Source: Leucoraja erinacea (taxonomy: Eukaryota). From it: DNA of 64,000 nt. The DNA lies in the NCBI RefSeq assembly GCF_028641065.1, contig NC_073411.1, positions 13,330,001 through 13,394,000 of the forward strand. Reading direction: 5' to 3'. Position numbers and translations under genes: made by a program. Below the pieces are notes generated by a model. The model saw only the letters and a program-made list of their open reading frames with translations. It was not told the origin of the DNA and did not search any database. This document shows, in pieces, positions 38,254-64,000 of the stretch. How positions within the stretch are numbered: position 1 is the first letter of the stretch; each line of letters opens with the position of its first letter.

Positions 38254-38325
38254 GTAAGGTCCACACGCAGCGACACACGGCTTGCAGGTACAGCAGGGCC
38301 GCTGGAACTTTGGTTCAGTTTAGAG

Positions 38326-38757
38326 CAGTGGTGTACGCCCCACAGGGGGGCAATTTGATTTTTAAGGGGGGCAATTGCGCGCAACTGAGGTCTGGGTCCA
38401 AATTTTTGTTTTTTATTTTTCTCTCTTTATTACCTGTGAATACTCTTTTATTATCATATTTATCATTATTATTATTTTAATACCACCTAATGTTTTTTCT
38501 TTTTTTTTTTACAATTTTTTAGTAATTTCTTGCTCAGAACTTTAACTGTCTTTTGTTTATTTCATTTTTCTTTTTCATGGATGCCATGTTCTTTTGAAGC
38601 TTGTTTAAACCAAGGTATTGGCGTTTTAAGCTTCTTCAGCTGAAACGGAGTTCACTTTTTAAATGATAAGAATTATATATCACCACATGGGGGGGGGGCA
38701 TTAGGATTTTAGAGGTGATTAGGTGGGGCATGGCCAAAAAAAGGTTGGGAACCACTG
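38326..38757. mobile_element. hAT (Charlie-like) MITE
   Basis: Ends CAGTGGT...ACCACTG with a perfect 8-bp TSD GTTTAGAG on both sides. Confidence 0.85.
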
Positions 38758-38814
38758 GTTTAGAGATACAGATCCACCGAGTCCGCGCCAACCGGCGATC
38801 ACCCCACCACTAGT

Positions 38815-39120
38815 TTAATGTAGAGATACAGCACGGAACCAGGCCATTCGGCCCACTGGGTCCATGCTGACCAGCAAACCCCCGCACCATAACACTATCC
38901 TACACCCACTAGGGACAATTTTTACACTTGTACCAAGCCAAATTAACCAACATACCTGTACGTCTTTGGAGTGGGGGAGGAAACCGAAGATCGCGGAGAA
39001 AACCCACGCAGGTCACGGGGAGAACGTACAGACGGCGCCCGTAGTCGGGATCGAACCCGGGTCTCCGGCGCTGCATTCGCTGTAAGGCAGCAACTCTACC
39101 GCTGCGCCACCGTGACCGCC
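38815..39120 (-). mobile_element. tRNA-derived SINE (V-SINE/HE1-like)
   Basis: A box GGTGGCGCAGCGG and B box GGTTCGATCCC on the minus strand, with a TCTCTA-type tail. Confidence 0.75.
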
Positions 39121-40679
39121 CAGTTTAGACCGTTAGTTTAGTGCAGAGATACAGCACGGAAACAGGCCCTTGGGCCCACCACATCCGTGCCGACCAGCGA
39201 TCACCCGAACACTAGTTTAGTTTAGAGATACCGTGCCGACCAGCGATGCCCGTACGGTAGGACAATCCTACACACCTGGGACAATTTACAATTTTTTTTA
39301 CTGAAGCCAATTAACCTGCAAACCTGTACGTTTTGGGGATGTGAGAGGAAACTGGAGCACCTGTGTAGAATAGTAGAATAGTTTCTTTATTGTCATTGTA
39401 ACATGAACCATGTACAACGAAATTTAAAAATGTCAGCCAGTCAGTGCACCATTCAAACATTTCTAAAAGCTAACGATACATACAAGGTAAAATATTAAAA
39501 GATAAACAACTAAATAAATATCACGAAAATAGCACGCATAAACACCCAACCCTCCATCCTTCTGTCGATTTCACAGTGTACCACAGTCCCTTAGTATGTA
39601 TCGCCCCTGCGTTCCTTGGCGGCTACATTTAGTGCTTTTATAGCAGTGGGGTAATGGTAGCAATGGAACACCCATACGGTCACAGGGAGAACGTACAAAC
39701 TCCCTACGGAGAGCACCTATAGTCAGGATGGAACCCAGTTCTCTGGCGCTGTGAGGCAGCATCTCTACCACTGCACCACCATGCCTCCGCGCTGTTAGTT
39801 GGATCTCTTGTGATTTGTAAATATTTTAGTAAATGTTGGGGGGATGTTAAGTTGGGTTTGGATTTACGTGGAAAGATAGAAAGTAGGTGCAGGAGTAGAC
39901 CATTCGGCCCTTCCAGCCAGCACTGCCATTCAATATGATCATGGCTGATCATCCACAATCAGTACCCCGTTCCGGCTTTCTCCCCATAACCATTGAATCC
40001 TTTAGCCTGAAGAGCTAAATCTAACTCTCTTGAAAACATCCAGTGAATTGGCCTCCACTGCCTACTGTGGCAGAGAATTCCACAGATTCACAACTCCTCC
40101 AACCTTATCTACTGTAGTCGCTGTTCCAGGTGAGACCAAGTGCAGGCTCAGACATGGTTTCGCCGAACACCTCCGCTCACAGTCACAGATTCACAACTCT
40201 CTGGGTGAAAAAGTTTTTCCCCATCTCAGTCCTAAATGGCCGACCCCTTTATTCTTAAACTGTGACCCCTGGATCTGGACTTGCCGCCAACACCAGGAAC
40301 ATATTTCCTGCTGTTTATTTCTATAAGATCCCCTCTCATCTTTCTAAATTCCGGTGAATGTAAGGCCAGTCGATCCATTCTTTCATCATATGCGGAGAAG
40401 GCAGGAACGGGGTACTGATTGGGGATGATCAGCCATGATCACATTGAATGGTGGTGCTGGTTCGAAGGGCCGAATGGCCTACTCCTGCACCTACTGTCTA
40501 TTGTCTACCATACGCCAGGGTGTGGAGTAGCTGGGATCTCATTACTGCTGGGGTCAAGTGTCCGATCTCGGACAGTGGCTGCACTGGGTGACTGGTTCAG
40601 ACGGAGCTTGGAGGGAGGGAGTGAGTGAGGGGGGTGGTCTGTGCTGTCCAGCAATTGACCCCTCTGCCTGTGTCCACAG

Positions 40680-40787
40680 TGGCACGGCCTGACACGTGAG
40701 CAGCAGTCCAAGTACTATGAGCTGGCGAGGATGGAGAGGCAGCTGCACTCCCAGCTCTACCCTGGCTGGTCGGCACGTGACAACTAT
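40680..40787 (+). CDS. TCF7L1: TCF7L1 exon 10 (HMG box, second part)
   Basis: [36 protein letters not shown]|gtaagt; LHSQLYP is TCF7L1-type. Confidence 0.96.
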
Positions 40788-41514
40788 GTAAGTACTCTCC
40801 CAGCCTAGTCTGCGCCGCTGGCCGCCGTGACTCTCGTCTCCCCGCCAGACGTGTGGACGGACCCAAGGGGAGATGGAGTCTAGTGATGCAGAACCCATGG
40901 AGACCCCAAACGTCGCCTATTCCTTCTCTCTGTAGATGCTGCCCCACCCGCTGAGTTTCTCCAGCATTTTTCGTTCACTTTCACTTTGTCCGTGCCCAGT
41001 GCCAGATCTTGTACACCTCAATATCCAGCCTCTCCCTCTAACTCGAGCCCAACTAACATCCTGAATCATTCTGCTTGGTGGTTGACATGTGACATTGAGG
41101 GGGAATGGGGGGGGGGGGGGGGGGCGTGTTCTCGATGGGCAGGGAGGGGGGGGTCAGGGGTCAGGGGGGGCCCCTTGGGTTGGCCAGAATTTGGTTTTCT
41201 GGGTTGGGGGGGATGGTGGGTGGTCAGTTTAGTGGTGGGTGAGGGATCAGTTGGTCACGGGGTGGTCAGTAGAGGGGTGTGGGGGGTCGGAGGGCTGTAC
41301 CGGTTGGGTGAAGGGGTCAGCTGGTCAGTGGGTGGCCTGGTGTGGTGTGGGGGGCCGGAGGGCTGTACTGGGTGGGTGAAGGGGTCAGCTGGTCAGTGGG
41401 TGGTCGGGTGTGGTGGTGGGGGGTCGGAGGGCTGTACCGGGTGGGTGAAGGGGTCAGCTGGTCAGGGAATGGCCGGGCCGTGCTGAGCTCACTGACTTGG
41501 TTTCCATTTTTCAG

Positions 41515-46300: not shown

Positions 46301-48194
46301 CCCATCTCATCCTAAATTCCAGCCCAGTTGACCTATTATTTCATCCTACATCAATCCCGTCATCCCTATTATTATCCTGGTGAACCTACGCTGCACTCAC
46401 TCAATAGCAAGAATGTCCTTCCACAAATTAGGAGACCAAAACTGCACACAAAACTCCAGGTGCGGTCTCAACAGGGCCCTGTAAAACTGCACTCAAATCC
46501 TCTCGTTACGAATGCCAGCATGCCATTAGATTTCTTCACTGCCTGCTGTACCTGCATGCTTACTTTCAGTGATTATGTACAAGCACACCCAGGTCTCGTT
46601 GCACCTCCCCTTCTCCTAATCTGACACCATTCAGATAATTCTGAAGAAGGGTCTAGACCCGAGGCGTCACCCATTCCTTCTCTCTAGAGATGCTCCAGTC
46701 CTGATGAGTTGCTCCAGCATTTTGTTTACCTTCGATTTAAAGCAGCATCTGCATTTCTTTCCTACACCATTCAGATAATAATCCGCCTTCCTGTTCTTGC
46801 CACCAAAGTGGATAACTTGCATTTATCCACATTATAGGTAGGCAAAAATGCTGGAGAAACTCAGCGGGTGCAGCAGCATCAATGCAGCGAAGGAAATAGG
46901 CAACGTTTCGTGCCGAAATCCTCCTTCAGACCGATATTATCCACATTATACTGCGTCTGCCATGCTTCTGCCCACTCACCCATCCTAATCCAGGTCACTC
47001 TGCAGTCTCATAGAGCAGCGAAGGAAGATGAGGAAAAAAGTTTTCACACAGAGTTGTGAATTTGTGGAATTCTCTGCCTCAGAAGGCAGTGGAGGCTGAT
47101 TCACTGGATGCATTCAAAAGAGAGTTAGATAGAGCTCTTAGGGCTAGCAGGATAGAAAATAGGTGCAGGAGTAGGCCATTCAGCCCTTCGATTCGCCCCC
47201 CCCCCCCCTCGGATCTAGGTATATTTGGGGGGGGGGGAAGCAGGAATGGTTTCGAGACCATTCGGCCCTTCAGCCATGATCACATTGAATGGTGGTGTTG
47301 GCTCGAAGGGCCGAATGGTCTATTCCTGCACCTATTGTCTATTGTATCTAAAGAGCTGGCGTTACTCAGCGGGACAGGCAGCATCTCTGGAGTAATCCCG
47401 CCCACCTGCCTATGATGGGCACCAGGCCGGGCCAATCAATCGCGATGTCCCGCGATGTCCCGCCCACCCCTCCGATGATGGGCACCGGCTCGACCATTCA
47501 GCGCCGCCGCTCGGCCCAGTGGACCAATGAGCCGGAGGAGGGGCGTATCCTCGCTGCAAAGAGTTGGTGCACAAGTTGCCATCGACTTTTTATAGTTTTG
47601 TATTCGCTTTTAAAAAATATATATATATTAAAAAATCAACGTTTTGGAATTAAGTCAAACAGTCTTTATCTGTGTGTTCATTTACAAACGTCCTAGACTA
47701 TAGACAAAAGTGCAGGAGGAGGCCATTCGGCCCTTCGAGTCAGCACCGCCATTCATTGTGATCATGTCTGATCATCCACAATCCTGCCTTCTCCCCATAT
47801 CCATTAATTCCTCTAGCCCTGAGAGCTCTGTATAACTCTCTTTTGAATGCATCCAGTGAATTGGTCTCCACTGCCTACTGAGGCAGGGAATTCCACAGAT
47901 TTACAACACTGGGTGAAAATGTTTTTCCTCGTCTCAGTCTGATTGCCAACCCCTCGTTCTTACTGTGGCCCCTGGTTCTGTACTCCACCAACATCGGGAA
48001 CTTGTTTCCTGCCTCTAGCGTGTCCAATCCCTCAATAATCTTATATGTTATATTATGGAACAGTCTCTATGTGATTCTGAGGAAGGGTCTTGACCTGAAA
48101 CGTCACCAATTCCACGTACACATCGCCCCCTACACCACACGTTACACTGTTATACTACTCGTGTGGACTGCTGCAAGTCACACACGATCCTTTG

Positions 48195-48900
48195 CACTAA
48201 TGCACCTTGCATTGCCGCTGTGCATCGTTGCATGCCATGCATTGCCCATTGCACCGTCCGCTGGGCACTGTCGCATGTCCTGAACACCATTACATGCCAT
48301 GCACTCCCCTGTGCATCGTTGCATGTCATACAATGTCCCTGGGCACAGTTACAACCCATGCATTGTGGCCCATGGGCACAGTTTCATGCCATGCATCGTC
48401 CCTGGCCACGGTTGCAATATATGCATCGCCTCTGTGCACCATTGCACGAAATGCATCGGCCCCGTGCATTGCCCCATGTGAACAGCTGCACGTCGTGCAT
48501 TGGCCCTGTGCACCGTTCCATGACGTGCATTGGCCCTGTGCACCGTTGCATGTCATGCATTGGCCCTGTGCACCGTTGCATGTCATGCATTGGCCCTTTG
48601 CACCTGCACTGCCCCATGTGCAACATTGCACGCCGTGCATTGCCGCACGCGTATCATTGCATTGGCCCTGTGCACAGCTGCACATTACCCCATCGCCCCC
48701 CCTGTGCACCGTTGCATGCCGTGCATTGCCCGATGTGTACCGTTGCACGACATGCATCGCCCTGTGCGCAGCTGTACATGTACGGCCCCCATTGCACGCC
48801 ATGCATTACTCCCTGTGCACCACATTGCACGTCATGCATTGCCACCAGTGCACGCCCATGCATCCCCCCCCTCTGTGCACCGTTGCATGTCATGCATTCC
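48195..48900. repeat. Degenerate 30-bp TGCA-rich minisatellite upstream of UBE2D exon A
   Basis: The unit TGCATTGGCCCTGTGCACCGTTGCATGTCA is clearest at 48495-48605. Confidence 0.8.
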
Positions 48901-48924
48901 CTCCACTGCCCCCACCTTGAAGCT

Positions 48925-49056
48925 CACACCTGCCGCGGGTCCGCTCCGCCGTCGGCGCATGCGTGCCGCCCGCCATTGTGACGTCGCGGGTGCGCGGCCC
49001 CGCGTGACGTCAGCGGAGACGGGAGCGGCGCGAGTCTGAGGCGCGCGGCCGCGGGG
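48925..49056 (+). promoter_or_regulatory. CpG-rich promoter of UBE2D exon A
   Basis: NRF1-like GCGCATGCGT (48955), YY1-like CCGCCATTGT (48970), TGACGTCG (48979) and a perfect CRE TGACGTCA (49005). Confidence 0.65.
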
Positions 49057-49080
49057 ATGGCGCACCGGCGGATCAACAAG
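49057..49080 (+). CDS. UBE2D: UBE2D-type first coding exon A (MAHRRINK)
   Basis: ggggATGG context, 24 coding nt, phase-0 donor GTAGGC. Homologous to the MALKRI(N/H/Q)K first exon of UBE2D genes. Confidence 0.7.
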
Positions 49081-52021
49081 GTAGGCGGGAGCGCGCACGG
49101 GCACCCGCACCGGGGGAGGAGAAGGTTCGGTCAGTGGGGGCAGTGATGGCGAGTGGTCAATTAGAGTGGTCAGTGGTGAGTGGTCACTGATGGGGAGATG
49201 AGTGAGGGGTCTGGTGCTGATGGGTCAGTGGACGGTCACTGGTCAGGGGGTCAGTGGGGGGGGGGGCAGTGGTGGGAAGGGTCTGATGAGGGTCAGTGAT
49301 ATTGGTGGGGGTCAGTGGAGGTGGTGGCGTGAGAGTCAGTGGTCAGAGAGAGAGGGGTCAGTGACATTCAAGAGGTAGACAAAAGTGCTGGAGAAACTCA
49401 GCGGGTGCAGCAGCATCTATGGAGCGAAGGAAACAGGTAACATTTCGGGCCCGAAACGTTGCCTATTTCCTTCGCTCCATAGATGCTGCTGCACCCGCTG
49501 AGTTTCTCCAGCCCTTTTGTCTACCTTCCATTTTCCAGCATCTACAGTTCCCCCTTAAACATTCAAGAGGCATTTAATGAACCGGGCACAGGGAATGGAG
49601 GGGTGTGGATCACGTCAAACGGCCCTTTCACTGCCCCCCCCCCCCCCCCGTCATAAACCAGCAGATGCAGTCCCTTCACCCCCACCTCAGCTCAGCATTC
49701 GCCTCAATTTTGACAAAGCTGTCTAGAGTCGTAGACCTCATCTACACTAATCCCACCTGCCCGCGTTTGGCCCATGTCCCTCTAAACATTTCCTTTCCAT
49801 GCATCTGTCCAAGTGTCCTTTAAATGTTGTTATAGTACCTGCTTCAATTATCTCCTCTGGCAGCTAGTTCCAGGTATCCTCCACCCTCTGTGTAAAAATG
49901 TTGCCCCTAGGATTCCTATTAAATCTCTCCCCCCCACCTTAAACCTATGTCCTCTGGTTCTTCATTCTCCTACTCCTACTCTGGGTAACAGATTATTTGC
50001 GTTCACCCTCTCTATTCCCCTCATGATCGTATACACCTCTATAAGACCACCCCTCATCTATGTTGGCATTTGTAGATATAAGGATAAAACAAGTTAATGT
50101 ACATTTGGACTTTCACAATATTTTTGAGAGGAATATTCAGAGTATTGAGTATAGAATCCATGTTCTCCAGAGATGCTACCTATCCCACGGAGGACTTACT
50201 CCAGCCCTTTGCGTCTTGTTTGCAATCCCGCATCTGGTTCCTTGTGCCTTTGGTTAACATTCCGGGTCAGATCACGTTCATCAGAACCAAGGATGGTGCC
50301 ACAAGGCTCCCATAGCAGACATCCAGGGAAAGCTGGGACAACGCTCAAACCTCACGAAGGGTCCCGACCCGAAACGTCGCCTATCCATGATCTCCAGATA
50401 TGCTGCCTGACCCGCTGCGTTACTCCAGCACTTTGTATCTAACTCAAACACCAAACAAAATCGTGGCTTGGCTGGTGATGAGAATGGTCCTGCTGTGAGA
50501 ACCTGCAGCACATCTCGCTAGTTTGCACACCCACTGTTTGCTGCCCTTGGTGGCTGCACCAGGGAAGATTTCTGGAATGTGTATCAACTCTGTGGGCTGT
50601 TGGCTAGTCAGACACTGCTACAAACTTCAACTGAAACCTAGAGAAAGGTTTCCAGCCCGAAACCTACTGATTTATCATTACAAGGAAATGTCGTAACCTG
50701 ACACACACCATTGTTTAGCACTGAAGATACAGTCACTAAGTGCTGGAGTAGCTCAGCGAGTTAGGCAGCATCTCTGGAGAAATATTTTCTCCAGATTTGC
50801 CCCATTGTGTTTCTCCAGCACTTTGTGTCAATCGTTGGTACAAACTAGCATCTGCAGTTCTTTACTTCTGCATTGTTGAGCCAGCACCAGTTGAGCAGAC
50901 GCTGCGAGGGTTTTTTTTAAGTGGGGCTCCGGACCTCCCGTGGTTGCACAGCGAAGGACTGGAACCTATTTAAAACAAAATAAAGTCTGTTTGCTCGAGG
51001 GTTCTGTGTACAGGAATGTTGACATGCTGACCTAATGTGAATGGAATGATGCGGCTGTTACTGAGAATGGCCACACGTACTAGACATATATTTGCAAATA
51101 TTCACTAATGAAATATTTTTTTGTGAAAAATCTGGAAGTGGTCAGCAGGCATAATCTATGGCAAGAATGACTTGGCATTTTCAGGACAACGATTGGGAAA
51201 GGTTAACTCTTTCCAATCTTTCAACAATGTCCTTGTTCCCCCGTGTGCTTCCAGCAAACGCGTTCTCATATTTTTGTCAGATGCCTTTTTTGCTTTTCGA
51301 TCTCCAGGGAGATGTCCTCGGCTCCGACATCTGCAGTAAGCATCGCTGAGCGCTCCGAGCAAAGCCTCCTGTCTTAGTTACAGAGCCCCTCAGCCGCAGT
51401 TAGTTAGCTCTTTGTGTAAACCATTACTGAGTTTCCTGTGTGAGGGGGTGGGAGAGCAGTGAGGGCAATTGGAGGGGCTGGGAGTTTGGAAGGAGTTATA
51501 CGCCGCCTCTCAAAAGACGGTGTAGAACAAACACAAAGTGTTGGGAGTAACTTAGCCGGTCAGGCAGCATCTCTGGAATAAAAGGATGGATGATGTTTTG
51601 GGTCGGAACCTTCTTCAGACGTATAGAAGGGGTGGGGTCCTTCCTGGTGTTTTGCTCATGATTCCAGCATTCCTTGTGTTTCTACCGTGGTTCCCTCTAC
51701 AGCTGGCATTCCTAGTCACTTTGTTTCCGAGTTATCTCTTTAGACGGGGCTGTGCACAGTGCTGCATTGGGTGCATGATTACATTAAATGGCGGTGCTGG
51801 CTCGAAGGGCCGAATGGCCTACTCCTGCACCAATTGTCTATTGTAGACGGGGCTGCATTGGGTGTCCTGTAGATGGGGCTGTGCATGGTGCTGCATTGGT
51901 TGGACTGCAGACGGGGCTGAGTTGAATGCATTGACCAGGAGGCTGCACGAACGGTGCAGCATTGGCGCAGATCCTTGCCCTGGCGGTCAGTGACGTGAGC
52001 ACATCGTGCAGTCAGCGGCGT

Positions 52022-52405
52022 TCGTCAGCGACGCAGCGCGTCGGGCGTCAGTGACGCAAGGCGCCGGGCGGAGCAACAGTCAGTGACGCAAGGCGCCGGG
52101 CGGAGCAACCGTCAGCGACGCAGCGCGCCGGGCGTCAGTGACGTAATGCGCCGGGCGGGGCGACCGTCAGTGACGCAATGCGCCGGGCGGGGCGACCGTC
52201 AGTGACGTAAGGCGCCGGGCGGGGCGACCGTCAGTGACGCAAGGCGCCGGACGGAGCAACCGTCAGTGACGCAGCGCGCCGGGCGTCAGTGACGCAATGC
52301 GCCGGGCGGGGCGACCGTCAGTGACGCAAAGCGCCGGGCGGGGCGACCGTCAGTGACGCATTGCGCCGGGCGGGGCGACCGTCAGTGACGTAAGGCGCCG
52401 GGCGG
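52022..52405 (+). repeat. 32-bp CpG minisatellite with half-CRE palindromes and GC boxes, upstream of UBE2D exon B
   Basis: About 13 units of CGTCAGTGACGYAANGCGCCGGGCGGGGCGAC, with a few 23-24 bp variants. Confidence 0.9.
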
Positions 52406-52431
52406 CGAGGCGGGCGGGCGGACGGACGGGG

Positions 52432-52455
52432 ATGGCGAAGAGGCGGATCCTGAAG
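52432..52455 (+). CDS. UBE2D: UBE2D-type first coding exon B (MAKRRILK)
   Basis: ggggATGG context, 24 coding nt, phase-0 donor GTAAGC. Nucleotide-homologous to exons A and C. Confidence 0.68.
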
Positions 52456-55400
52456 GTAAGCGGGCGGCTGGAGAAGGGTCTCGACCCGACACGTCACCCG
52501 TACCCTCTCCCCACACACGCTGCCCGTCCCGCTGAGTTACTCCAGCTTTTTGTGTCCTTCTTCGGGGAGAGGGGAGGACAGCAGCCGCCCACGCCCCGGC
52601 CCCGGCCCCGGCCCGCCGGACACTCTCTTCCAGGCAGCATCTGACCAGCGTGTCTAGGGCGGCGGTGGGGGCACCGAGAGGAGAAGACTCCCCCCCCCCA
52701 GGCCGCCATGAGGGACGTGGGCCCAGAACCGGGGGGGGGGGGGGGAGATTCTTCTTCTTGGTTTCTTGGTCCTCTAAAATATTCCAAATGGATTTAAACT
52801 GGAGGTGGAGGTGGTACCCCATCTCTCCCCCCTCCCCCACCCCCTCTCTCCTCCCCTCCTCCTCCCATCCCTCTCTCCCCAAACCCCACTGCCCTCTCTA
52901 CCCCACCCCCTTCCCTCTCTCCCTCCGCCCCCTTCCCCCTACCCCTCTGTCCCTCTTCCACCACTCCCCGGGAATAAAAGAGATTGGGAGAGGAGGGGTG
53001 AGGGGAGGGATGGGTGGGGGGAGAGGAGGGGAGGGGTGGTTGAAGGGGAGAGGGGGGTGGCGGGGGAAGGGTTTGGGATGGGGAAGGGAGGAGGACGGGA
53101 TGGGGAGAGGGGAGGTGAAGGGATGGGAGATGGTGAAGGTAGAAGGGATGGGGAGAGGAAGTGAAGGGATGGGAGAAGGCGGAGTTGGGGAACTGGATGG
53201 GAGATGGCTGGGGAAGGAATGGAGGGGATAGAATGGGGGGGAAAGAGGGGATGGGGAGTACTGTGGAGCAACTTGGATCCGTCCTTCAGAGATGCTGCTT
53301 AAACCGTGGAGTTCTCCACCACTTTGTGTCTTTTTATAGTGAACAGCTTGGCCATCAAAAGTAGTGTTTGGGTTGGGACTGAAGAAGGGTTTTAGGTTTT
53401 GGGTCTGATAAAGGGTCCCGACCTGAAGTGGCACCTATCCATGTTCTCCGAGATGCTGCCTGACCCGCTGAGTTACTCCAGCATTTTGTGTCTTTATTTC
53501 CCCTCAGGAACTCGGTGCCTGAGAGTGCAGTAGAGTCAAAGTTAAGATATATTTGATAAGCACTTGAGAGCTGTACGTGCAACACTACAGGCCCCTATTG
53601 GAGACTTGGATTAAACTGTGTATCTGGACCAAAGGATGATCTCCATATCATAAGTTTAGGACGGCTGTACAGAGTAGCAATGTGATGATGATCAGATAAT
53701 CTGTAGCTGCCGGTTAGGGGATAAATGTCCACTGGGACGCCTGGGGAACATTTAATTGGAAACGGCGTACAGCGATCTGATCTGATAAATACAGGTTAAT
53801 ACGGAAATGAAACTGAAAGTTAAACGAGTGCTACACAATGCGTGTAGCTTGTCACGGGTTTATTGAACACATTTTAGTCATATGTCCTTGTGCCTCCTTT
53901 GGTCTGGTGCCAAATCTTGCCTGATGATGCTCCAGGTAAAGATCTTGGGGCATCTCATTGGATTTAAAGTTTAAGAAAGAACTGCAGATGCCGGAAAAAT
54001 CGAAGGTAGACAAACATGCTGGAAAAACTCAGCGGGTGAGGCAGCATCTGTGGAGCAAAGGAATAGGTGGCGTTTCGGGTTGATACCCTTCTTCAGTCCC
54101 AAAACGTCACCTATTCCTTCGCTCCATAGATGCTGCCTCGCCCGCTGAGTTTCTCCAGAATTTTTGTCCACCTTCATTAGATTTAAAGGTGCGTTTCCAA
54201 CACATTGTTACTGGATGTAAGAAAACTGCGGATCTCAAATCTACCAGTTAATATAGAAACAATTAAGGATTGTGTAAAAAAGGGTAACATCTCACATGGT
54301 TAAAAGAGAGGTCTATTATTGTTGACGAGTGCCACTGTTCAGTGAAAAGGTTTTGTTCGCGAGCCATCCAATCAAGTCAGATAATCCTATATATGAATAC
54401 AATCTAGCCAAAACACAATGGGTAGAGCGATGAGAAATATACCAGAGTGCAGAGTATAGTTCTCAGCATTCTTCCAGAACAGTTCAAGAATAAAGAGTCC
54501 AATATCTGCATGACGTATGTTTGAAAACTGGGACAGTACCCGAACTTCTGGAAGGACCATTCAGTGGCCTGATAACAGAGGGGGAAAAGCTGTTCCTGAG
54601 TCTGGTGGTGCTTGCGTTCTAACTTTTGTACCTTCTGTCGGATGGGAGAAGGGAAAAGGAAAGACCGGGGTGGGACAAGTCTTTGATTATGTTGTCTGCT
54701 TTCCTGAGGCAGTATGAAGTGTAGATGGGGTCGATGATGGGGTCTGTGTGTTGACTACAACAACATCCACTACTCCCTGCAATTTCTTGCAGTCTTGGGC
54801 AGAGCTGCTCCCCAACAAAGCTGTGATGCAATCTGACAGAATGCCTCCTGTGGTGCACCTGTAAAAGTTTGTAAGAGTCGTTGGAGACACGTCAAAAAGA
54901 GTTTAGTTAGACAAAGTGAAAATATGAAAATATTATTTTAGATTATGTTTGGGGATGATTGTGACCAAGGGATTTTGTCGTGAAGTGCTGTACGTAGTAT
55001 TAAAAAAGAACAGAGAGGCATTGTTACGGATGCTTGTAAGAGGAAATTAACCCAAGCAGGAAGTTATTACTGGGGAAAATCTAATTCCAGGCAAACCATA
55101 GGTAATTAAAATAATGATTTAAAAAGTCAAGTTGGACAAAGACCAAAGCAATCCATGGGGTGAGATAAATTCCAAAGAATTAGGATTGCAGATACATGCA
55201 GCACTGAATTATTGTGTGTAAAGAAGTTGTCACAAGGATGGAGGCTTTAGGACTCAAACTGGGACCTTTCCTGTCATTTCCCTGTGATGTGGGCCTGGAA
55301 TAAGGACTGTTTTGGGGAGTTTGGTGCCGGGAATGGTCATAGAAACATAGACCCATAGAAAATAGGTGCCAGAGTAGGCCATTCAGCCCTTCGAGCCTGC

Positions 55401-56440
55401 ACCGCCATTAAATATGATCATGGCTGATCATCCAACTCAGTATCCCGTACCTGCCTTCTCTCCATACCCCCTGATCCCTTTAGCCACAAGGACCACATCT
55501 AACTCCCTCTTTAATATAGCCAATGAACTGGCCTCAACTACCTTCTGTGGCAGAGAGTTCCAAAGATGTTTTTCTCATCTCGGTCCTAAAGGATTTCCCC
55601 TTCATCCTTAAACTGTGACTCCTTGTCCTGGACTTCCCCAACATCGGGAACAATCTTCCTGCATCTAGCCTGTCTAACCCCTTAAGAATCTTTGATGTGG
55701 TCAAATGTGTGTCATGATGTGGTCTGCCCATCAGAGACGGTTAGTGTGATTGGGGCATCTGGCCCAATAGAGGACACTGCCCTTGGTTTGAAAGGATTCT
55801 GAGCATTTTGCAGAGTTGGTGGTATCTCACCAATGTCTGTAACGGGTAGTCCCGGAATCTCTCAGGGATCACTTCTTCCAGGGACACTTAAACTTTATGT
55901 GGGATTTGAGTTCTCGATCTTCAAATACCTTTCCCCAGAGGAGCGTGGTTGTGCTGTCACAATGAGGTGAGCTTCAGGGTACTTTCAGTGGCAGGCAGCT
56001 GCCAAGTAGTGGGAAACCAGCCACATTTCCCGGGGCCTTGTCGTGCACCATTATTGTCAGAGTATGGAGTTCTTCAAAATTCAAGAGAGTTTATTGTCAT
56101 GTGTCCCATATAGGACAATGAAATTCTTGCTTTGCTTCAGCACAACAGAACATAGTAGGCATGACTACAAAACAGATCCATATACCATTATATAAATATA
56201 AACACACATGAATAAATAAACTGATAAAGTGCAAATAACAGATAATGGGCTATTAATGTTCAGAGTTTTGTCCGAGCCAAGTTTAATAGCCTGATGGCTG
56301 TGGGGAAGTAGCTATTCCTGAACCTGGTCGTTGCGTCCCATATAGGACAATGAAATTCTTGCTTTGCTTCAGCACAACAGAATATAGTAGGCATAAATAA
56401 ATACAGAACAGAACTGATCAGTGTGACCATATACTAATGA

Positions 56441-56475
<35 letters not shown>

Positions 56476-59274
56476 AATAAACAGATATTTTATCGGACAA
56501 CAGACATTGATTGAAGATCTGCGTTTAGCAGATCTTAGAATAAGACCCATCCTCTCATATTCTTCAGTTGAGGTTAACTTGAGCTTCTGAAGTGGATACC
56601 ATTCGGTTCCACCTGCAGTCCCAAACCCACATACCAGTTCAAGATGACGGTAATACTGCACTGTTAAAGATGTAAGGTTACAGATAGCTCCCTGTATTCT
56701 TCTGCGACTTGTCCTATATTAGCTGTTGATTATTTCTAAAATTAAATTGTGCTTTATTATGCTCCACCTCTTGTTGATGTTGCTAAATGTTAGCCATGCT
56801 GTGAGGACAGAGCCTACGATGGGAACTTGCATGTGGGGTATAATGTAGGAAAAGGTGCGGTTATCCATTTTGAGAAGGAAAATAAAGAAGGGGATTATTA
56901 TTGAAATCTTCTTCTTGTGTATGGCGTGCACAGCCTAAAGTTGTAGGACAACTTGTTCTATTTGATTGTGCACGCCAGGTTGATTGCATTTGTTGAAACA
57001 GGGCGGACCACGTGACGGTTGCAATCTCCCACCACATTATTGAAATGGAGGCTTCAGAATACAGTTGCCGAAACGTTGCCTATTTCCTTCGCTCCATAGA
57101 TGCTGCTGCACCCGCTGAGTTTCTCCAGCACTTTTGTCTACCCCAGGTTTATTATTGTCCTGTGATCGAGGCCCGATGAAAAGCTTTGTTTTCTATGCCA
57201 TCAAATCAGATAATAATATTCTTAAATACAATCAAGCCAAACTCAAAGTACAATAGGTAAGGCAAAGGGAAATATACAGAGTGGAGAATATAGTTTTCAG
57301 CTTTGTGGCGCATCAGGTCCAGAGACAAAGTCCAATATCCTCACTGAGGTAGAGGCAAATCGGAGAGTACCCCGGCTTGTGGAAGGACCATTCAGAAGCC
57401 TGATAAGCAGGGGAAGACCCTCCATCAGTCGGAAGAAGGGTTTTGGCCCGAAACGTTGCCTATTTCCTTCACTCCATAGATGCTGCTGCACCCGCTGAGT
57501 TTCTCCAGCACTTTTGTCTAAGCAGGGGAAGAAGCTGTTCCTGAGTCTGGTTGTGTGCGCTTTCAAACTTTTGTACCTTCTGCCATAGGAGCGGGCAATG
57601 CAGCTCAAAGGCTTCTGTTTCTTCTCATGCGCAATCTGTACACACGTTGACTTTGCCAGCACTGTTCTGCTGAAACATCAACTCTATTTCACTTTCCACA
57701 GATGCTGACTGACCTGATGAGTATGTGCAGCATTTCTGTGAGAGTTGTAGCAAAAAATGATCGTCTCTGGGCCCCAGAGTGCGGAATGTTTTATATTAAA
57801 TGCCTGGTTAGCTGAAAGGGAAATGAATGGGGGTGTGGGTCAGGGGGCATGGGCAGGGGGAGAGAGGGAGGGTGATTTGGGCAATGACGGAGTGGTGGAG
57901 TGGACGGGGCCAGTTCGGCGGGGACGAGGCAGTGTGGGGATGGAGGCACTGGGGATAGGGCAATGGGTAGGGTGGCTGGTGGGTTGCGGGGGGGGGGGGG
58001 TGGGTTGTTGGGGAGCGGGAGGCTCATGCCAGTGGCCTCCGTCCCCTCGGCTCTGGTTTGAGGTGGTGTTGGGGGTGGAGCAGGGAGAGTGAGAGGACGG
58101 TGGGTAGGGGGAATGAGGAGGGTAGCGACAGCGAGGGTATGGTGGGAGGAGGGTAGGGGGACAGGATTATGAGGGGTAGGGGTCGAGGGATCAGTGGGAG
58201 GAGTAGCGAGAGCGAGGGGGGGTAGGTATGGTAAAAGGGGCAGGGGGAGTGAGAAGGGAGGGTGAGAGGTGAGGTGTAGGGGTGGGGTGAGAGAGTGGTG
58301 GTGTGCGAGAGGGGAGGGGTGCGAGAGGGGAGTGAAAGAGGGAGGGAGGTTAGGGGGACGGGGTAGGGATGAGGAGGGTTAGGGGGACTGGTAGTGGGGT
58401 AAGGGTAGAGAGCATGAGTGGGTTGGGGGGGGGATGTGTGTATGGGGGGGGGAGGGCGTGTGTGTGGAGGGGAGGGGATGTGAGTGGGGGGGCTGTGGGG
58501 GTGAGAAGGGGGGATGTGTGAGTGGGGGGCTATGTGTGTGTGTGGGGGTGTGTGAGAAGGGGGGTTGTGTGTGTGGGGGGGTGAGGAGGGGGGGATGTGT
58601 GAGTGGGGGGGTGAGGAGGGGGGGGGGGTGGTGTGTGAGTGGGGGGGGCTATGTGTGTGGGCTATGTGTGTGTGGGGGGTGGTGAGAGGGGGGGGGATGT
58701 GTGAGTGGGGGGCTATGTGTGTGGTGGGGATCTGTGTGTGTGTGGTGTGGGGGTGAGAAGGGGGGAGATGTGTGAGTGGGGGGCTATGTGTGTGTGGTGT
58801 GGGGGGGGGGGGGGGTATGAATGGGGGGTATGTGGGTAGTGTGTGTGTGTGGGGGGGGCTATGTGTGTGTGTGGGGGGGGGGATGTATGAGTGGGGGGGG
58901 GCTATGTGTGTGTGTGGGGGGGGGTGTATGTGGGGGGGGGGGGTGTGTGTGTGTGGGGGGGGGGGGGTGGGGGTGGGGGTGTATGTGGGGGGGGGGGGGT
59001 GGTGTNNNNNNNNNNNNNNNNNNNNNNNNNNNNNNNNNNNNNNNNNNNNNNNNNNNNNNNNNNNNNNNNNNNNNNNNNNNNNNNNNNNNNNNNNNNNNNN
59101 NNNNNNNNNNNNNNNNNNNNNNNNNNNNNNNNNNNNNNNNNNNNNNNNNNNNNNNNNNNNNNNNNNNNNNNNNNNNNNNNNNNNNNNNNNNNNNNNNNNN
59201 NNNNGGGGGGGGCTGTGTGTGTGTGGGGGGGGGGCTGGGGGGGGGGGGGGGGGGGGCTATGTGTGTGTGGGGGA

Positions 59275-59387
59275 TGGGCGAGAAGCGCGTCTCCCGGCCC
59301 TACTGCGCCTGCGCCGGGCCTGCAGTGCGCCTGCGTCGGTGGGCCGAGTGCGGGGCGGAGCGGCGGCGGGGCCGGGTCCGGCGGGGC
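59275..59387 (+). promoter_or_regulatory. CpG-rich promoter of UBE2D exon C
   Basis: Two NRF1-like TGCGCCTGCG motifs and a GGGGCGG box just upstream of the ATG. Confidence 0.6.
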
Positions 59388-59411
59388 ATGGCGCTGAGGC
59401 GGATCCAGAAG
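59388..59411 (+). CDS. UBE2D: UBE2D-type first coding exon C (MALRRIQK), closest to the canonical MALKRIQK
   Basis: ggcATGG context, 24 coding nt, donor GTAAGC, inside a CpG island. The rest of the gene presumably lies beyond the window. Confidence 0.8.
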
Positions 59412-59744
59412 GTAAGCGAGGGCGATGCCGATGCCGGCCTCCGAGGACTGGCCCCATCCGCCGGCCGCCCGCCCGCCTCATCGCCACAGTTACCGGTGAT
59501 CACAGTGGGCCGAGCCGAGGCCCCGGGCCTATGGCGAGCGGAGAGCCGCGGCCTGAACTCAGGCGGTCCGCCGCCTCAAGCGGCTCCCGGCCCGGACACC
59601 CGCCGCTGCCCCACCGTCTCCCTGTCCCCCACCACCACCTCTATCCTCCCCGAACCCCTTCCCAATGTCTCCCCAGCCCCTCCAAATGTCCTCCCTTCAC
59701 CCCCTCTCAATATCCTACCCCCACCTCATCTCAAACTCTCTTCA

Positions 59745-60290
59745 CACCGTCTCAATGCCCCCCCCCCACCCCGTCTAAATGCCCCACCCCCACACCGTCT
59801 AAATGTACCCCCCCCACCCCGTCTAAATGCCCCCCCCCCCACCCCGTCTAAATGCCCCCCCCCCACACCCGTCTAAATGCCCCCCCCCCACCCCGTCTAA
59901 ATGCCCCCCCCACCCCGTCTAAATGCCCCCCCCCCCACCCCGTCTAAATGCCCCCCCCCCACCCCGTCTAAATGCCCCCCCCACACCGTCTAAATGCCCC
60001 CCCCCCACACCGTCTAAATGTACCCCCCACCCCCCCGTCTAAATGCCCCCTCCCCACCGTCAATGCCCCCCCAACCCCGTCTAAATGTCCCCCACCCCCC
60101 CTAAATGCCCCCCCCCCTCTCAATGTCCCCCCCCCCAAATGTCCTCCAACCCCTCTAAATGTCCCCCCCCCCCCCTCTCATGTCCCCTCAACCCCCTCTC
60201 AATGTCCCCCCCCCCCAAACCTCCTCTCAATGCCCCCCCCCCCCAAACCCCCTCTCAATGTCCCCCCAACCGCCTCTCAATGTCCTCCCT
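59745..60290. repeat. C-rich minisatellite (CCGTCTAAATGCCCCCCCCA-type units) downstream of UBE2D exon C
   Basis: Many units with variable C-run length. Confidence 0.85.
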
Positions 60291-63200
60291 CTGACCCCCT
60301 CTTCCCCCTCACCACCCCATCAACCTCATCAACCTCAAGGGATTACCCAATCTTTCCTCCCCACCCACCCACTAGTTTGTCCACTACTTTCACTCTTCAA
60401 AATATTTTTTGCTACGGTGTATGCTACTGTGATAGTATTTAAAATGTTTACCATGTCTACCATTTTTTCTGGATAATTAATTCCCCTTGTGTCAACTTTA
60501 AAGGGACTGCTATTTACTTTTTTCTATCTCTGAATGGAAAAGTACACCCAATGTTCTTGTCTCCCTTGTTCATATTCTATTTTCCGTCTTTATAATTATT
60601 TTCAATTATCCATTGAAGTTTTTCAAATATCCACTGTTCTCAAACTCCACGATTCCTAGGAGGTTCATAATACGCCTCTTATTTCAGTGTTATCCTCACC
60701 ACAGCAGTAGAAAATGAAGATTTGGTTAATTGTCATCTAGTAGTAAAAATTGTGCCAGAATGAAGATGAGCTTGGGTATATGAAGCTTCTGGACTGATGT
60801 AACAGCCCAGCTATTTTGTTAATATTCTTAAGTAAAGTAATCTTGCCTTTATCCAGGTCCAACTGAATGTGACAATTAGGGAAAAAGAATGTTAAAAGCC
60901 TTTTGGTTGTGAAAAATAACACTGCAAGAGGATAACGGGTAGTTGCGCCAAGCCTGGTCAGTAACAGGGAATGAAGAATTGATATGGTCAATAATATTTA
61001 GCAGATGGAGAAGCACTTGTAATCCTTCTCAATATTATCGGTTGATCATGCTGAGCTAGCAACTTGCACTTTATGCAACACAACCATTTCCAGGCCTTTG
61101 TTTATATACCTTTTTTTGTTCAGTCCTTCCAGTAGAGTGTTTCTTGGGGATGTAATCATTGGTGTCACCTGATGCATAATAAAACACCAGTCAGGCCACA
61201 GTTGGAATACTGTTAGCAGTTTTGGGCCTCATATCCGAGGAAGAATGTGCCGGCATTGGAAAGGGTCCAGAGGAGGTTTATGAGAATGATCCCAGGGATG
61301 ATTGGGTTAATAACATATGAGAAGCGTTTAAAGGCTATAGGCCTGTATTCACTGGAGTTTAGACGGATGAGGGAAGATCTTTACTGAATAGCAAAAGGCC
61401 TAGATAAAGTAGACATGGAGAGGATGTTTCCAGCAATGTCTAGAAACCAGAGGGCATACCCTCAGAAGAAAATAATGTACCTTTAGTCAAAGGATGTCAA
61501 ATTTGTGGAATTCATTGCAATGGAGGCCAAGTCAGTGGGTATTTTTAAAGCGGATTGGTTAGTAAGGGTGTCAAAGGTTATGGGGAGGTGTCAGGAGAAT
61601 GTGGTTAAGAGGGAAAGTTAGGTCAGTCGTGGTTTAATATAGCGGAGTACACTTGATGGGCTGAATAGCCTAATTCTGCTCCTATGACACGAATAGAATG
61701 AAAATGAAGAGGAATGTCTTTAGCCAGAGAGTAGTGAATCTATGGAATTCATTGTCACAGCTGTCAAGGCCAAGGCATCGGGTATTTTTAAAGCGGTGAT
61801 TGATAGGTTCTTGATTAGTACGGGCATGAAAAGTTACTGGGGAAAGGCAGGAGAATGGGGATGAAAGGGAGAGATAGATCAGCCATGATGGACTGACGGA
61901 GCAGACTCGATGGGCCAAATGGCCTCATCTGCTCCTATGTCTTATGGATCTTAGTCTGAATTTGTGATTTCAAAGACTGAAATGTGTGACAAGCCTACTT
62001 TTAATTTACATTCCTTTAATCATATTTAATTTAAACGTTTAATTAACCCCTTGGCATCCAAACGGTGTTTTGCTGTCACTGACTCGATGTTCTGCCTCTG
62101 GTGTACAATTAACATTACTTGCAGCCTTCTGATTGGAGCTACCATATGTACTTCTGTTGGATGTTCATGCCTCATCGTCCCATTTGTGGAGAATTCAGCA
62201 CGGAAACAAGCCCTTTGGCCCAATTTGTCCACGAGGATCAAGTTGCCCCCCATTATCCCACGTTTGGCCTATATCCCCCTACACTTCAGATAGACACAAA
62301 AATGCTGGAGAAACTCAGCGGGTGAGGCAGCATCTATGGAGAAAAGGAATAGGTTACATTTTGGGTCGAGACCTTTCTTCAGACTGAAAGCTGGAGTAAC
62401 TCAGCGGGTCAGTCAGCATCTCTGGAGAAAAGGAATAGGTTACGTTTCAGGTCAAGACCAACACCTTTCTGATCCATGTAGGATTTGAGAGTTAGATAGA
62501 GCTCTAGGGCCTAGTGGAGTTAAGGGATATGGGGAGAAGGCAGGCACGGGTTATTGATAGGGGACGATCAGCCATGATCACAATGAATGGCGGTGCTGGC
62601 TCGAAGGGCTGATGGCCCCCTCCTGCACCTATTTTTCTATGTTTCTAGATGTTTGGACCAGTCTGACCTTCCCACTTGGTTCTGCTGTTTCCTACCGCAT
62701 TTTGTATTATTGCATCTACTCCATTGATGAACAAACTTCACATACATTTTCAACTTTAATGTCATCGCACAAATACAAGTACATTTGACAGCTGCATTCC
62801 CCCCCCCCCCCCCCCCCCCCCCCCCTCCCCTTGGTACATGTCTAAATTTGGAGGGCTGTCCAACGGAGAAACAGCAGGCTGACTCGTTAGTATTTGCAGC
62901 TTCACATATCACAGATAAAATGTCAGGCTCTTCAGCCGCAATCCATTACTAAGTCTTATCTCACTTGCCTCTGGCCCACTGGAGATAATAGTACTACGGA
63001 ATACAGGGAGGAAGGAGTGGGCTTTTCAATATTGACTTTGAATCTCGTGGAGTCATCATTTCACACACGGGCTAAAACTGCCTTGTGCCATCTTCCACCA
63101 GCTGATATTTGCTGCTCTTCCAAAATTGGAAGAACCACTGAAATTTAAAAGTCCCCAAAAAATGTTGGTGGGAGACTTTAATGTCCACTAATTCTGTCCT

Positions 63201-64000
63201 GCCAGCACAGATTAAACTGAATGCTGAAGGACATAGCTTCCAGGATGTGTCTCCATGTGTTGAATGAACCAACACCTGAAATAAACCTTGACCATGTGCA
63301 TAGCAGTTGCAGGTATAACTACGTGTGGCTGTGTTGGTGCAGGTAGATGGAGGCATAGCTGCAGGTACAACTAGGTGTTGATGCAGGTATATGGCTACAT
63401 AGTGCCAGGTATAGCTAGGTGTTGGTGCAGGTATATGGCTGCATAGATGCAGGTATAACTCGGTGGTGGTGCAAGCAGACACGAAGTGCTGGGGTAACTC
63501 AGCGGGTCAGGCAGCATCTCTGAAGAAAAAGAGGAGACGTTTTGGGTTGGGACCCTATATGTCTGTGTTGGTGCAGGTATATGGCTGCATAGATGCAGGT
63601 ATAACTAGTTATGACTGCATTGGTGTGGAGTGATTATTATGTTGTCCTAGTGGGAACAAAATTCAATGTTCTCTCCCGGGCATCCTCTAGCATGTTACGG
63701 TGAATCACCATTTGGTAGATATGATCGACTCAGTGGATTGAACAGGACCATTTCTGCTGATGGGCACCAAGTTGTTGTGGTCCATTGCGATGTGTAACGC
63801 CCAGATCCAGTATATCTCTCGCCATTCCCTCGCATTCAAGCGGGATACTAATTGACATTTAATAAAGTGTAGCGGAGCTAGCCAGGAGTGGTGGCAGCTG
63901 TAACATGCCAAACACCAGCATGCAATACGGAGTGACGTGATCTCCCAACCACTCACTGCTCTGCTATTAAAGCAAAGCAAACCTATTTATCTCTCGGTGG

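What the first reader, a model, noticed from the sequence alone, without database searches (positions are those of the whole stretch)
49057..59411. Three tandem UBE2D-type first exons, each with its own promoter: candidate variable N-terminus E2 system
Seen: three homologous cassettes ATGGCG-NNN-(A/C)GGCGGATC-NNN-AAG|GTA(A/G)GC at 49057 (MAHRRINK), 52432 (MAKRRILK) and 59388 (MALRRIQK). Each has exactly 24 coding nt, a strong Kozak context, a phase-0 donor and a separate CpG-rich upstream region. By eye I found no UBE2D exon 2 (EL.DL.RDPP..CSAGP) or later exon between or after them. Known: UBE2D/UbcH5 genes begin with an 8-codon exon (MALKRIxK) encoding part of helix 1, which contacts the E1 UFD and RING/HECT E3s. 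Inference: these are duplicated alternative first exons spliced to one downstream catalytic body, giving isoforms that differ only at residues 3 and 7 of that surface, in the manner of UGT1A or protocadherin variable exons. I do not know of this arrangement for UBE2D, but cannot verify novelty.
Basis: partly seen in the sequence, partly recalled or inferred. Interest (0 to 1): 0.85.

Follow-up and report, generated by a model that had tools for sequence, protein, structure and literature searches.

The report
Three duplicated E2 enzyme first exons
A skate gene for a ubiquitin-conjugating enzyme appears to have three old copies of its tiny first coding exon, each behind its own promoter-like island, but whether the two upstream copies are ever used is still unproven.

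Summary
Three 24-nt cassettes (ATG..AAG|GTA; MAHRRINK, MAKRRILK, MALRRIQK) lie at 49057, 52432 and 59388 on the + strand. They are the only matches in 64 kb even with 3 mismatches, against 0.00 expected by chance. Similarity stops about 5 nt before the ATG and 9 nt into the intron; the flanks do not align (all p >= 0.08). Six of the seven variable columns fill codons 3 and 7 (p = 0.003), which points to protein-level constraint on all three copies. Each lies in CpG-rich DNA. All 10 CRE-like octamers of the window sit upstream of A (1) and B (9). A UBE2D profile found no UBC core exon anywhere in the window, so the enzyme body lies beyond 64000. The assembly gap is 183 nt upstream of C, in a microsatellite, and cuts no cassette.

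Use of the exons is not shown. In four RNA-seq runs, A had 0, 0, about 1 and about 1 fold depth, and B had none. Best reading (0.5): paralogous alternative first exons of one UBE2D-type gene next to a TCF/LEF gene. A published study places helix-1 positions 3 and 7 on the face that meets the E1 enzyme, which suggests tuning of E1 choice. This is untested.

The parts
49057..49080 (+). Cassette A: 8-codon first coding exon, MAHRRINK, followed by donor AAG|GTAGGC (49081-49086)
48930..49056 (+). CpG-rich upstream region of A. It holds the only full palindromic CRE (TGACGTCA) of the window at 49005-49012 (-52) and a TGACG half-site at 48979.
52432..52455 (+). Cassette B: 8-codon first coding exon, MAKRRILK, followed by donor AAG|GTAAGC
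52023..52405 (+). Tandem array (32-nt unit, about 12 copies, with 23-nt variants) directly upstream of B. It carries 9 of the window's 10 CRE-like octamers TGACG[TC][AC]A, the last at 52386 (-46). CpG o/e is 1.29.
52468..52560 (+). Copy of an interspersed SINE-like repeat that starts 13 nt after B's donor. It accounts for all RNA read depth near B.
   Evidence: family D12
59388..59411 (+). Cassette C: 8-codon first coding exon, MALRRIQK, 7 of 8 residues as in the MALKRIQK start of stored vertebrate UBE2D4-type proteins; donor AAG|GTAAGC
59205..59387 (+). The 183 read letters upstream of C: G-rich microsatellite, then CpG-rich DNA with one GCGC.TGCGC (NRF1-like, name recalled) at 59305. No CRE-like octamer.
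59006..59204 (.). Assembly gap (length only estimated) inside the microsatellite upstream of C. Not filled and not looked up.
59412..64000 (+). Start of the presumed intron 1 after C: 4589 nt with no UBC-type exon. It contains a C-rich 24-nt tandem repeat at 59642-60267.

Best explanation
The three cassettes are paralogous copies of the first coding exon of a single UBE2D (UBC4/5)-type ubiquitin-conjugating enzyme gene. That gene starts just downstream of a TCF/LEF gene, and its catalytic exons lie beyond the window's end. They arose by old tandem duplication of a short promoter-plus-exon-1 segment. All three have been kept as translatable, spliceable first exons. Cassette C (MALRRIQK, the canonical type) is most likely the main housekeeping start. 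A and B sit behind CRE-type elements and are most likely minor, condition- or tissue-restricted alternative promoters. Their transcripts would splice from the same phase-0 donor position to the shared exon 2, giving enzymes that differ only at residues 3 and 7 of helix 1. Shown: homology, intactness, codon-structured constraint, CpG-rich context, and absence of body exons in the window. Inferred: the gene's identity, transcription from A and B, and splicing to a common acceptor.
For: There are 3 of 3 exact pattern matches, on the + strand only, against 0.00 expected. The core 39 nt are 29-32 of 39 identical between pairs, while 175 nt upstream and 200 nt downstream show no similarity above shuffles (6 comparisons, p = 0.08-0.84). 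The copies are therefore old and only the exon has been kept. The 7 variable columns of the 24-nt CDS are 7, 8, 9, 10, 19, 20 and 21. Six fill codons 3 and 7, and the seventh is a synonymous CGG/AGG change. The probability that 7 random columns fill two whole codons is 0.0027. Among 26 distinct N-terminal 8-mers from 222 of 236 stored UBC4/5-type E2s, positions 3 and 7 are also the most variable, at 2.05 and 2.80 bits (M1, R5 and I/L6 were fixed by my search expression). ATG context and donors are intact in all three. GC is 0.69-0.78 and CpG o/e 0.81-1.29 at each. All 10 of the window's 10 CRE-like octamers lie upstream of A and B, at similar distances for the nearest one (-52 and -46). No UBC core exon lies between or after the cassettes, so they are not three complete genes. 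A TCF/LEF gene lies upstream on the same strand (Pfam CTNNB1_binding E = 2e-10 and 1e-12, HMG_box E = 4e-10). From recall only, human UBE2D1, D2 and D3 each share a chromosome arm with a TCF/LEF paralogue.
Against: RNA (4 runs, 7.3-14.9 million records each, 5-25% of each run read). The 200-nt bin holding exon A had depth 0 in X12 and X15, and 1.07 and 1.25 in X19 and X22. That is no higher than stray depth in neighbouring bins. No loose end or joint at 49080 was listed. The bin 52100-52299 was 0 in all four runs. The depth in 52300-52499 matches reads of the repeat that starts at 52468: about 185 reads cross 52490 in X12, and 180 of them carry C>A. Exon B itself therefore seems uncovered. Residue 3 is H in A and K in B, and neither occurs at position 3 in the 26 distinct 8-mers. 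That could mean decay as easily as new function. The gene's identity rests on 8 residues. In two database searches none of the listed proteins was a vertebrate-type UBE2D with these N-termini (0 of the 98 new proteins). Only 120 of 8000 scored candidates are listed, and clustering at 90% identity hides such isoforms, so this absence weighs little.
Confidence: 0.5

Rival explanations
1. Only cassette C is a working first exon. A and B are relics of promoter-plus-exon-1 duplications that are no longer used or never were. Their intact look reflects GC-rich, slowly changing CpG-island DNA, and their odd residue 3 (H, K) is the start of decay.
For: No reads on B and about 0-1 fold depth on A in 4 RNA runs. 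H3 and K3 are absent from 26 distinct family 8-mers. A's donor is weaker (GTAGGC against GTAAGC). A repeat is inserted 13 nt after B's donor.
Against: The flanks are saturated, yet 17 of the 18 CDS columns outside codons 3 and 7 are identical in all three, and ATG, frame and donor are intact in all three. Clustering of changes in two codons has p = 0.003 under uniform decay. No decayed copies exist, since 3 mismatches add no further site. CpG islands normally persist only where DNA stays unmethylated in the germ line (established knowledge). The RNA test had no positive control and the tissues are unknown.
Confidence: 0.27
2. A and/or B start other transcripts, such as non-coding or upstream-ORF RNAs or transcripts spliced to different exons, rather than isoforms of the E2. 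The E2-like peptide would then be incidental to them today.
For: Nothing shows a shared acceptor. The read-through ORFs from A and B end after 29 and 70 codons. The promoter-like islands are separate.
Against: Constraint follows the codon pattern of the E2 family, including the phase-0 donor right after codon 8. That pattern is hard to explain unless the 8 residues are joined to an E2 body.
Confidence: 0.1
3. The downstream gene is an E2 of another subfamily whose helix 1 also reads RRI.K or RRL.K (UBE2N/Ubc13-like or UBE2L3-like; N-termini recalled from memory), not a UBE2D.
For: All three cassettes have R4, whereas the vertebrate and other metazoan UBE2D proteins I inspected have K4. In one search, RRI starts were flagged only in the first-search listing, mostly metagenome-derived proteins, many without a source name, that resemble the giant-virus E2 query. 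Only 8 residues are available.
Against: C is 7 of 8 identical to MALKRIQK of stored UBE2D4-type proteins. The length is exactly 8 codons, whereas the recalled UBE2N and UBE2L3 first exons are longer. K4R is conservative and occurs within UBC4/5-type E2s (6 of 26 8-mers).
Confidence: 0.08

Closest known systems
UBE2D / UbcH5 / UBC4-5 family of ubiquitin-conjugating enzymes
   Same: The N-terminal helix-1 pattern M-A-x-[KR]-R-I-x-K. C is 7 of 8 identical to stored UBE2D4-type proteins. The variable positions 3 and 7 are the family's own most variable positions.
   Different: R instead of K at residue 4 in all three. H or K at residue 3 in A and B, not seen in 26 family 8-mers. Three alternative starts instead of one. 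The catalytic core was not seen because it lies outside the window.
Arrays of tandemly duplicated alternative first exons with their own promoters (UGT1A, clustered protocadherins; from established knowledge)
   Same: Several homologous first exons in one orientation, each in its own promoter-like CpG-rich stretch, upstream of a presumed common body, each ending in a donor at the same phase.
   Different: Each exon encodes 8 residues, not a domain. There are only three copies. Promoter activity and splicing to common exons are not shown.
Tandem exon duplication with mutually exclusive use in E2 genes of molluscs (inferred from gene models P0003 Mizuhopecten and P0007 Mytilus, which read through two copies of the C-terminal exon; Pecten 'isoform X7')
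   Same: The same enzyme family, with a duplicated small exon offering alternative versions of one surface.
   Different: That duplication is at the C-terminal end, and my reading of those models is an inference from protein sequences only. Here the first exon and its promoter are duplicated.
UBA1a/UBA1b alternative first exons of the E1 enzyme (PMC10920915, passage read)
   Same: A ubiquitin-cascade enzyme whose N-terminus is changed by the choice of first exon.
   Different: In UBA1 the alternative exon removes a nuclear localisation signal. Here two residues of a binding helix change.

Membership tests
UBE2D (UBC4/5-type) E2 gene | UBC core with HPN motif and catalytic cysteine | tested here: inconclusive
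   Absent from all six frames of the window. The window ends 4589 nt after C, so the core may lie beyond it.
UBE2D (UBC4/5-type) E2 gene | N-terminal helix-1 motif MALKRIxK | tested here: met
   C has 7 of 8, and A and B 5 of 8, residues in common with MALKRIQK. The invariant residues M1, A2, R5, I6 and K8 are kept in all three.
UBE2D (UBC4/5-type) E2 gene | First coding exon of 8 codons ending in phase 0 after K8 | not testable with these tools
   The cassettes have this form. That UBE2D genes of other vertebrates do is recalled.
UBE2D (UBC4/5-type) E2 gene | Linkage to a TCF/LEF paralogue (paralogon argument) | tested here: inconclusive
   A TCF/LEF gene lies on the + strand at about 27.7-40.8 kb. 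Its TCF7L1-like motifs and the human map positions are recalled, not tested.
Variable-first-exon array (UGT1A / protocadherin type) | Several homologous first exons in tandem, same orientation | tested here: met
   3 copies on the + strand within 10.4 kb.
Variable-first-exon array (UGT1A / protocadherin type) | Each exon has its own active promoter | tested here: inconclusive
   CpG-rich context at all three and CRE-like sites at A and B. No transcription start evidence; read depth about 0-1 at A and 0 at B.
Variable-first-exon array (UGT1A / protocadherin type) | Each first exon spliced to one set of constant exons | tested here: inconclusive
   No junction or loose end at 49080 or 52455 was listed in 4 runs. 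C and the acceptor were not examined.
Variable-first-exon array (UGT1A / protocadherin type) | Variable exon encodes a whole binding domain | tested here: not met
   Each encodes 8 residues.

The most novel reading that the evidence does not exclude
The three first exons form a switch for E1 choice. They differ only at helix-1 residues 3 (H/K/L) and 7 (N/L/Q). PMC12999496 states that positions 3, 7 and 11 of E2 helix 1 face the E1 UFD and that changing them moves E2s between UBA1-only and UBA1+UBA6 use. [quoted passage not shown] The skate gene would then make, from three promoters, one catalytic body with the same E3-binding face (R4, R5, K8 invariant) but different E1 charging. The form would be L3/Q7 as in dual-specific UBE2D, while K3 or H3 would be biased towards UBA1. 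A and B would be under CRE (cAMP/ATF/CREM-type) control. That positions 3 and 7 are UBE2D residue numbers is my assumption, because the figure and extended data could not be seen.
Probability: 0.12. Interest if true: 0.75.

Novelty: new member of a known kind. Interest (0 to 1): 0.42.

Why it matters
UBE2D enzymes serve hundreds of E3 ligases and are among the most conserved proteins known. Their diversity is usually ascribed to four paralogous genes. A single gene offering three promoter-specific versions of helix 1 would be a compact, natural experiment on what residues 3 and 7 do, and these are the residues a 2025 structural study links to UBA1 versus UBA6 charging. It would also be an example of tandem first-exon duplication in which the duplicated unit is only 8 codons plus a promoter. 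If A and B prove silent, the locus is an ordinary gene start with two well-preserved relics.

Tried and rejected
1. Separate complete paralogues: rejected, because no UBC exon exists anywhere in the window.

2. Chance or low-complexity artefact: rejected (0.00 expected).

3. Recent segmental duplication: rejected, because flanks are not similar above shuffles and the repeat finder shows only interspersed and tandem repeats around the cassettes.

4. Gene conversion as the cause of identity: set aside, because conversion tracts would not leave codons 3 and 7 saturated between identical runs (inference).

Most laid reads were interspersed repeats at 90-95% likeness. There was no positive control, so the negative result is weak.

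6. Looking for annotated skate isoforms in the protein collection.
- UBC4/5-type E2 genes were fetched from viral contigs by an active-site motif pattern (119 loci), aligned with the three window peptides and searched (7999 of 8000 candidates passed, 120 listed).
- A second search used metazoan UBE2D hits plus the peptides (7876 of 8000 passed, 120 listed).
- Nothing with these N-termini on a vertebrate-type body was found.
- The approach cannot succeed in principle if the skate protein sits inside a 90%-identity mega-cluster. One such cluster joins cod, oyster, rotifer and sea anemone proteins (1859 members, 40 read). I therefore did not spend the third search.

8. Literature.
- 'UBE2D3' + 'alternative first exon' gave 1 paper. 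Its passages were read, and the phrase concerns UBA1.
- In the UBE2D review PMC9790923, the word 'exon' occurs 0 times.
- The three peptides as text gave 0 papers.
- 'UBE2D' / 'alternative promoter' / 'first exon' gave 1420 papers holding at least 2 terms. None of the 15 listed mentions UBE2D (listing only).
- I found no description of this arrangement, but subscription journals and genome annotations were not searched.

8b. Supplementary files were not asked for. The exact mutated residues in PMC12999496 are in figures and extended data that I could not see.

9. The search of earlier findings gave nothing bearing on this locus.
Full report
OBSERVATION.
- A, 49057-49080: ATG GCG CAC CGG CGG ATC AAC AAG, followed by GTAGGC.
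- B, 52432-52455: ATG GCG AAG AGG CGG ATC CTG AAG, followed by GTAAGC.
- C, 59388-59411: ATG GCG CTG AGG CGG ATC CAG AAG, followed by GTAAGC.

A regular expression finds only these three on either strand. An IUPAC pattern of the shared letters, allowing up to 3 mismatches, also finds only these three. It has 0.00 matches expected in 100 dinucleotide-preserving shuffles. There are therefore no further copies and no decayed copies in the 64 kb. All three have G at -3 and G at +4 around the ATG, and a phase-0 donor after codon 8.

THE GAP. The N run 59006-59204 lies 183 nt upstream of C's ATG. On both sides is the same G-rich/GT-rich microsatellite. No cassette, donor or frame crosses it. It makes the B-to-C distance (6956 nt as written) and the extent of C's upstream region uncertain, and nothing else. 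I did not fill it or look it up.

HOW FAR THE SIMILARITY REACHES.
- In a MAFFT alignment of +/-100 nt, conserved columns cluster from about -5 to +33.
- Local alignments of 175 nt upstream and 200 nt downstream, tested against 300 shuffles each, are unremarkable in all 6 comparisons (p = 0.083 for B/C upstream, otherwise 0.24-0.84).
- The core 39 nt are 29-32 of 39 identical between pairs.
- The repeat finder shows that the surroundings are tandem arrays and copies of a SINE-like interspersed repeat, one of which begins 13 nt after B's donor.

The duplications are therefore old, and only the exon with a few flanking letters has been kept.

PATTERN OF CHANGE. Of the 24 coding columns, 7 vary among the three copies: 7, 8, 9, 10, 19, 20 and 21. 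Six of them fill codons 3 and 7 completely, and the seventh is a synonymous CGG/AGG change in codon 4. If 7 variable columns fell at random among codons 2-8, two whole codons would be filled with probability 0.0027 (analytic; 0.0026 simulated). I compared this with the family. Among 236 stored UBC4/5-type E2 proteins, 222 have a recognisable start, giving 26 distinct 8-mers. Positions 3 and 7 are the most variable (2.05 and 2.80 bits). My expression fixed M1, R5 and I/L6, so their invariance in that count is by construction. The three copies thus vary where the family tolerates change and are fixed where it does not. This is the main argument that all three have been under selection as coding sequence joined to an E2 body. 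Against it, H (A) and K (B) at position 3 occur in none of the 26 8-mers.

PROMOTER-LIKE CONTEXT. The -300..+100 regions have GC 0.69, 0.73 and 0.78 and CpG o/e 0.97, 1.29 and 0.81. Most 2-kb bins of the window are below 0.7. All 10 CRE-like octamers TGACG[TC][AC]A in the window lie upstream of A (one, the only full TGACGTCA, at -52) and B (nine, from -380 to -46). B's nine are carried by a 32-nt unit repeated about 12 times. The 183 letters available upstream of C have none. They hold one GCGC.TGCGC element, and the name NRF1-like for it is recalled. A and B therefore share a regulatory flavour that C lacks. This is motif evidence only.

WHAT GENE THIS IS. No UBC core exists in the window. 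Seven motif expressions gave one irrelevant hit. A profile built from six metazoan UBE2D proteins, run with all filters off against 3354 stop-free segments of the six frames, gave a best E = 1.8. The cassettes are therefore not three complete genes, and the body lies more than 4589 nt beyond C. C is 7 of 8 identical to MALKRIQK, the start of stored UBE2D4-type proteins. R at residue 4 occurs in 6 of the 26 family 8-mers. Among the 120 proteins of the first search it was flagged mostly in metagenome-derived proteins that resemble the giant-virus E2 query, many without a source name.

Upstream on the same strand is a TCF/LEF gene:
- CTNNB1_binding at 27.7 and 34.1 kb (E = 2e-10 and 1e-12);
- HMG box at 38.1 and 40.7 kb (E = 4e-10 and 7e-5).

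Its motifs look TCF7L1-like to me from memory. Also from memory, human UBE2D1, D2 and D3 lie on the same arms as TCF7L2, TCF7 and LEF1, and UBE2D4 lies beside CAMK2B, a member of the same paralogy group. A UBE2D4-type gene next to TCF7L1 would fit that picture. None of that paragraph's map data was tested here.

RNA. The look-up of sequencing runs offered raw-read RNA runs of the same species label or study. I laid 48500-54499 with X12, X15, X19 and X22 at 92% likeness. Records read were 7.3, 12.9, 8.7 and 14.9 million, that is 6, 5, 6 and 25% of the runs. Of the laid reads, 67-98% ran on into unlike sequence and most were 90-95% alike. They are copies of interspersed repeats expressed elsewhere.

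- Exon A: its bin (48900-49099) had depth 0/0, 0/0, 0/1.07 and 0/1.25. That is one to three reads in two runs, no more than stray depth in 48500-48699.
- Exon B: the bin 52100-52299 was 0 in all four runs. The depth in 52300-52499 (for example 30.6 in X12) equals what about 185 reads crossing 52490, 180 of them with C>A, give if they cover only the last 32 nt. That places them on the repeat that starts at 52468, so exon B appears uncovered. This last step is an inference from the bin arithmetic.
- No joint or loose end at 49080 or 52455 was among those listed (900 joints and 3066 loose ends were not shown).

Neither A nor B is therefore a major start in these samples. The tissues are also unknown to me.

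DATABASE ATTEMPT. To see whether annotated skate isoforms exist, I needed an E2 sequence supplied by a tool.
- An active-site motif pattern fetched 119 viral loci, and seven of their E2 ORFs were aligned with the three window peptides.
- The first search listed 120 of 8000 scored candidates.
- A second search with six metazoan UBE2D hits plus the peptides listed another 120.
- None of the 98 new proteins carries RRINK, RRILK or RRIQK.

This says little. Listing is by profile score, which the body dominates, and clustering at 90% identity merges most animal UBE2D proteins. One cluster of 1859 members, of which 40 were read, holds cod, oyster, rotifer, leech and sea anemone proteins.

MECHANISM. 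The most likely reading is that one UBE2D-type gene has three alternative first coding exons, produced by old tandem duplication. C would be the main start, and A and B would be minor or restricted, CRE-driven starts. Each would splice at the same phase to exon 2.

A further idea comes from PMC12999496 (section 8 and passages read).
- The legend of its Fig. 3 says that helix-1 residues 3, 7 and 11 face the E1 UFD.
- The text says that changing two or three residues at these positions gives UBA1-specific E2s activity with UBA6, and that negative charges placed there on UBE2D2 hinder UBA6 but not UBA1.

The skate cassettes differ only at residues 3 and 7. If the paper's numbering equals UBE2D residue numbers (assumed, since the figures could not be seen), the isoforms would keep E3 contacts and differ in E1 charging. 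This is a hypothesis without any test here.

KNOWN OR NEW. Alternative first exons, and tandemly duplicated exons used alternatively, are common. I found no description of such an arrangement for UBE2D in four searches:
-, 1 paper; its phrase concerns UBA1;
-, a UBE2D review with no occurrence of the word 'exon';
-, 0 papers;
-, a listing of 15 papers, none mentioning UBE2D.

Subscription journals and genome annotation were not covered. I file it as a new member of a known kind, of moderate interest. The interest would rise if A and B prove to be used.

Noticed in passing
window 27652-40805 (+): Exons of a TCF/LEF transcription factor gene: the beta-catenin-binding N-terminus at about 27.77 kb, a middle exon at about 34.1 kb next to an assembly gap (34323-34584), another at about 36.3 kb, and HMG-box exons at about 38.1 and 40.7 kb. 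The motifs GRK|WH, LHSQLYP and [17 protein letters not shown] look TCF7L1-like from memory.
   Followed up: partly
window 48186-48900 (+): A 30-nt minisatellite (unit about TGCATTGGCCCTGTGCACCGTTGCATGTCA) runs right up to A's CpG-rich region. It creates a misleading 295-codon stop-free frame (48094-48978).
   Followed up: partly
window 52023-52405: The CRE-bearing 32-nt unit upstream of B is amplified about 12 times, with higher-order periods of 119 and 151 nt. It is a tandem array of transcription-factor half-sites abutting a start codon. Copy number may be polymorphic.
   Followed up: partly
window 58404-59260 and 59642-60267: C is bracketed by a G-rich/GT microsatellite upstream, which contains the assembly gap, and a C-rich 24-nt tandem repeat (about CACCCCGTCTAAATGCCCCCCCCC, about 16-22 copies) downstream. 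These are strand-asymmetric G and C tracts on either side of a promoter.
   Followed up: no
window 49300-49520, 50356-50440, 51700-51850, 53409-53493, 53990-54170, 57065-57140, 57445-57520: Copies, in both orientations, of a SINE-like interspersed repeat (core ..CCCGAAACGTC..GCTGAGTT.CTCCAGC..TTTGT..). They attract hundreds to thousands fold RNA read depth at 90-95% likeness in all four runs, so the family is abundantly present in transcripts genome-wide.
   Followed up: no
proteins P0003 (Mizuhopecten), P0007 (Mytilus), P0232 (Pecten 'isoform X7'): Molluscan UBC4/5 gene models read through two successive versions of the C-terminal exon (..LLSICSLLCDPNPDDPLVP.. twice). This suggests tandemly duplicated, alternatively used last exons in the same enzyme family.
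   Followed up: no
loci L093, L099, L086 and proteins P0010-P0117: E2 ORFs on viral contigs, and many metagenome-derived relatives (several without a source name), start MSLRRIQK, MALRRINK or MALRRIQK. R at residue 4 is therefore common outside animals.
   Followed up: partly
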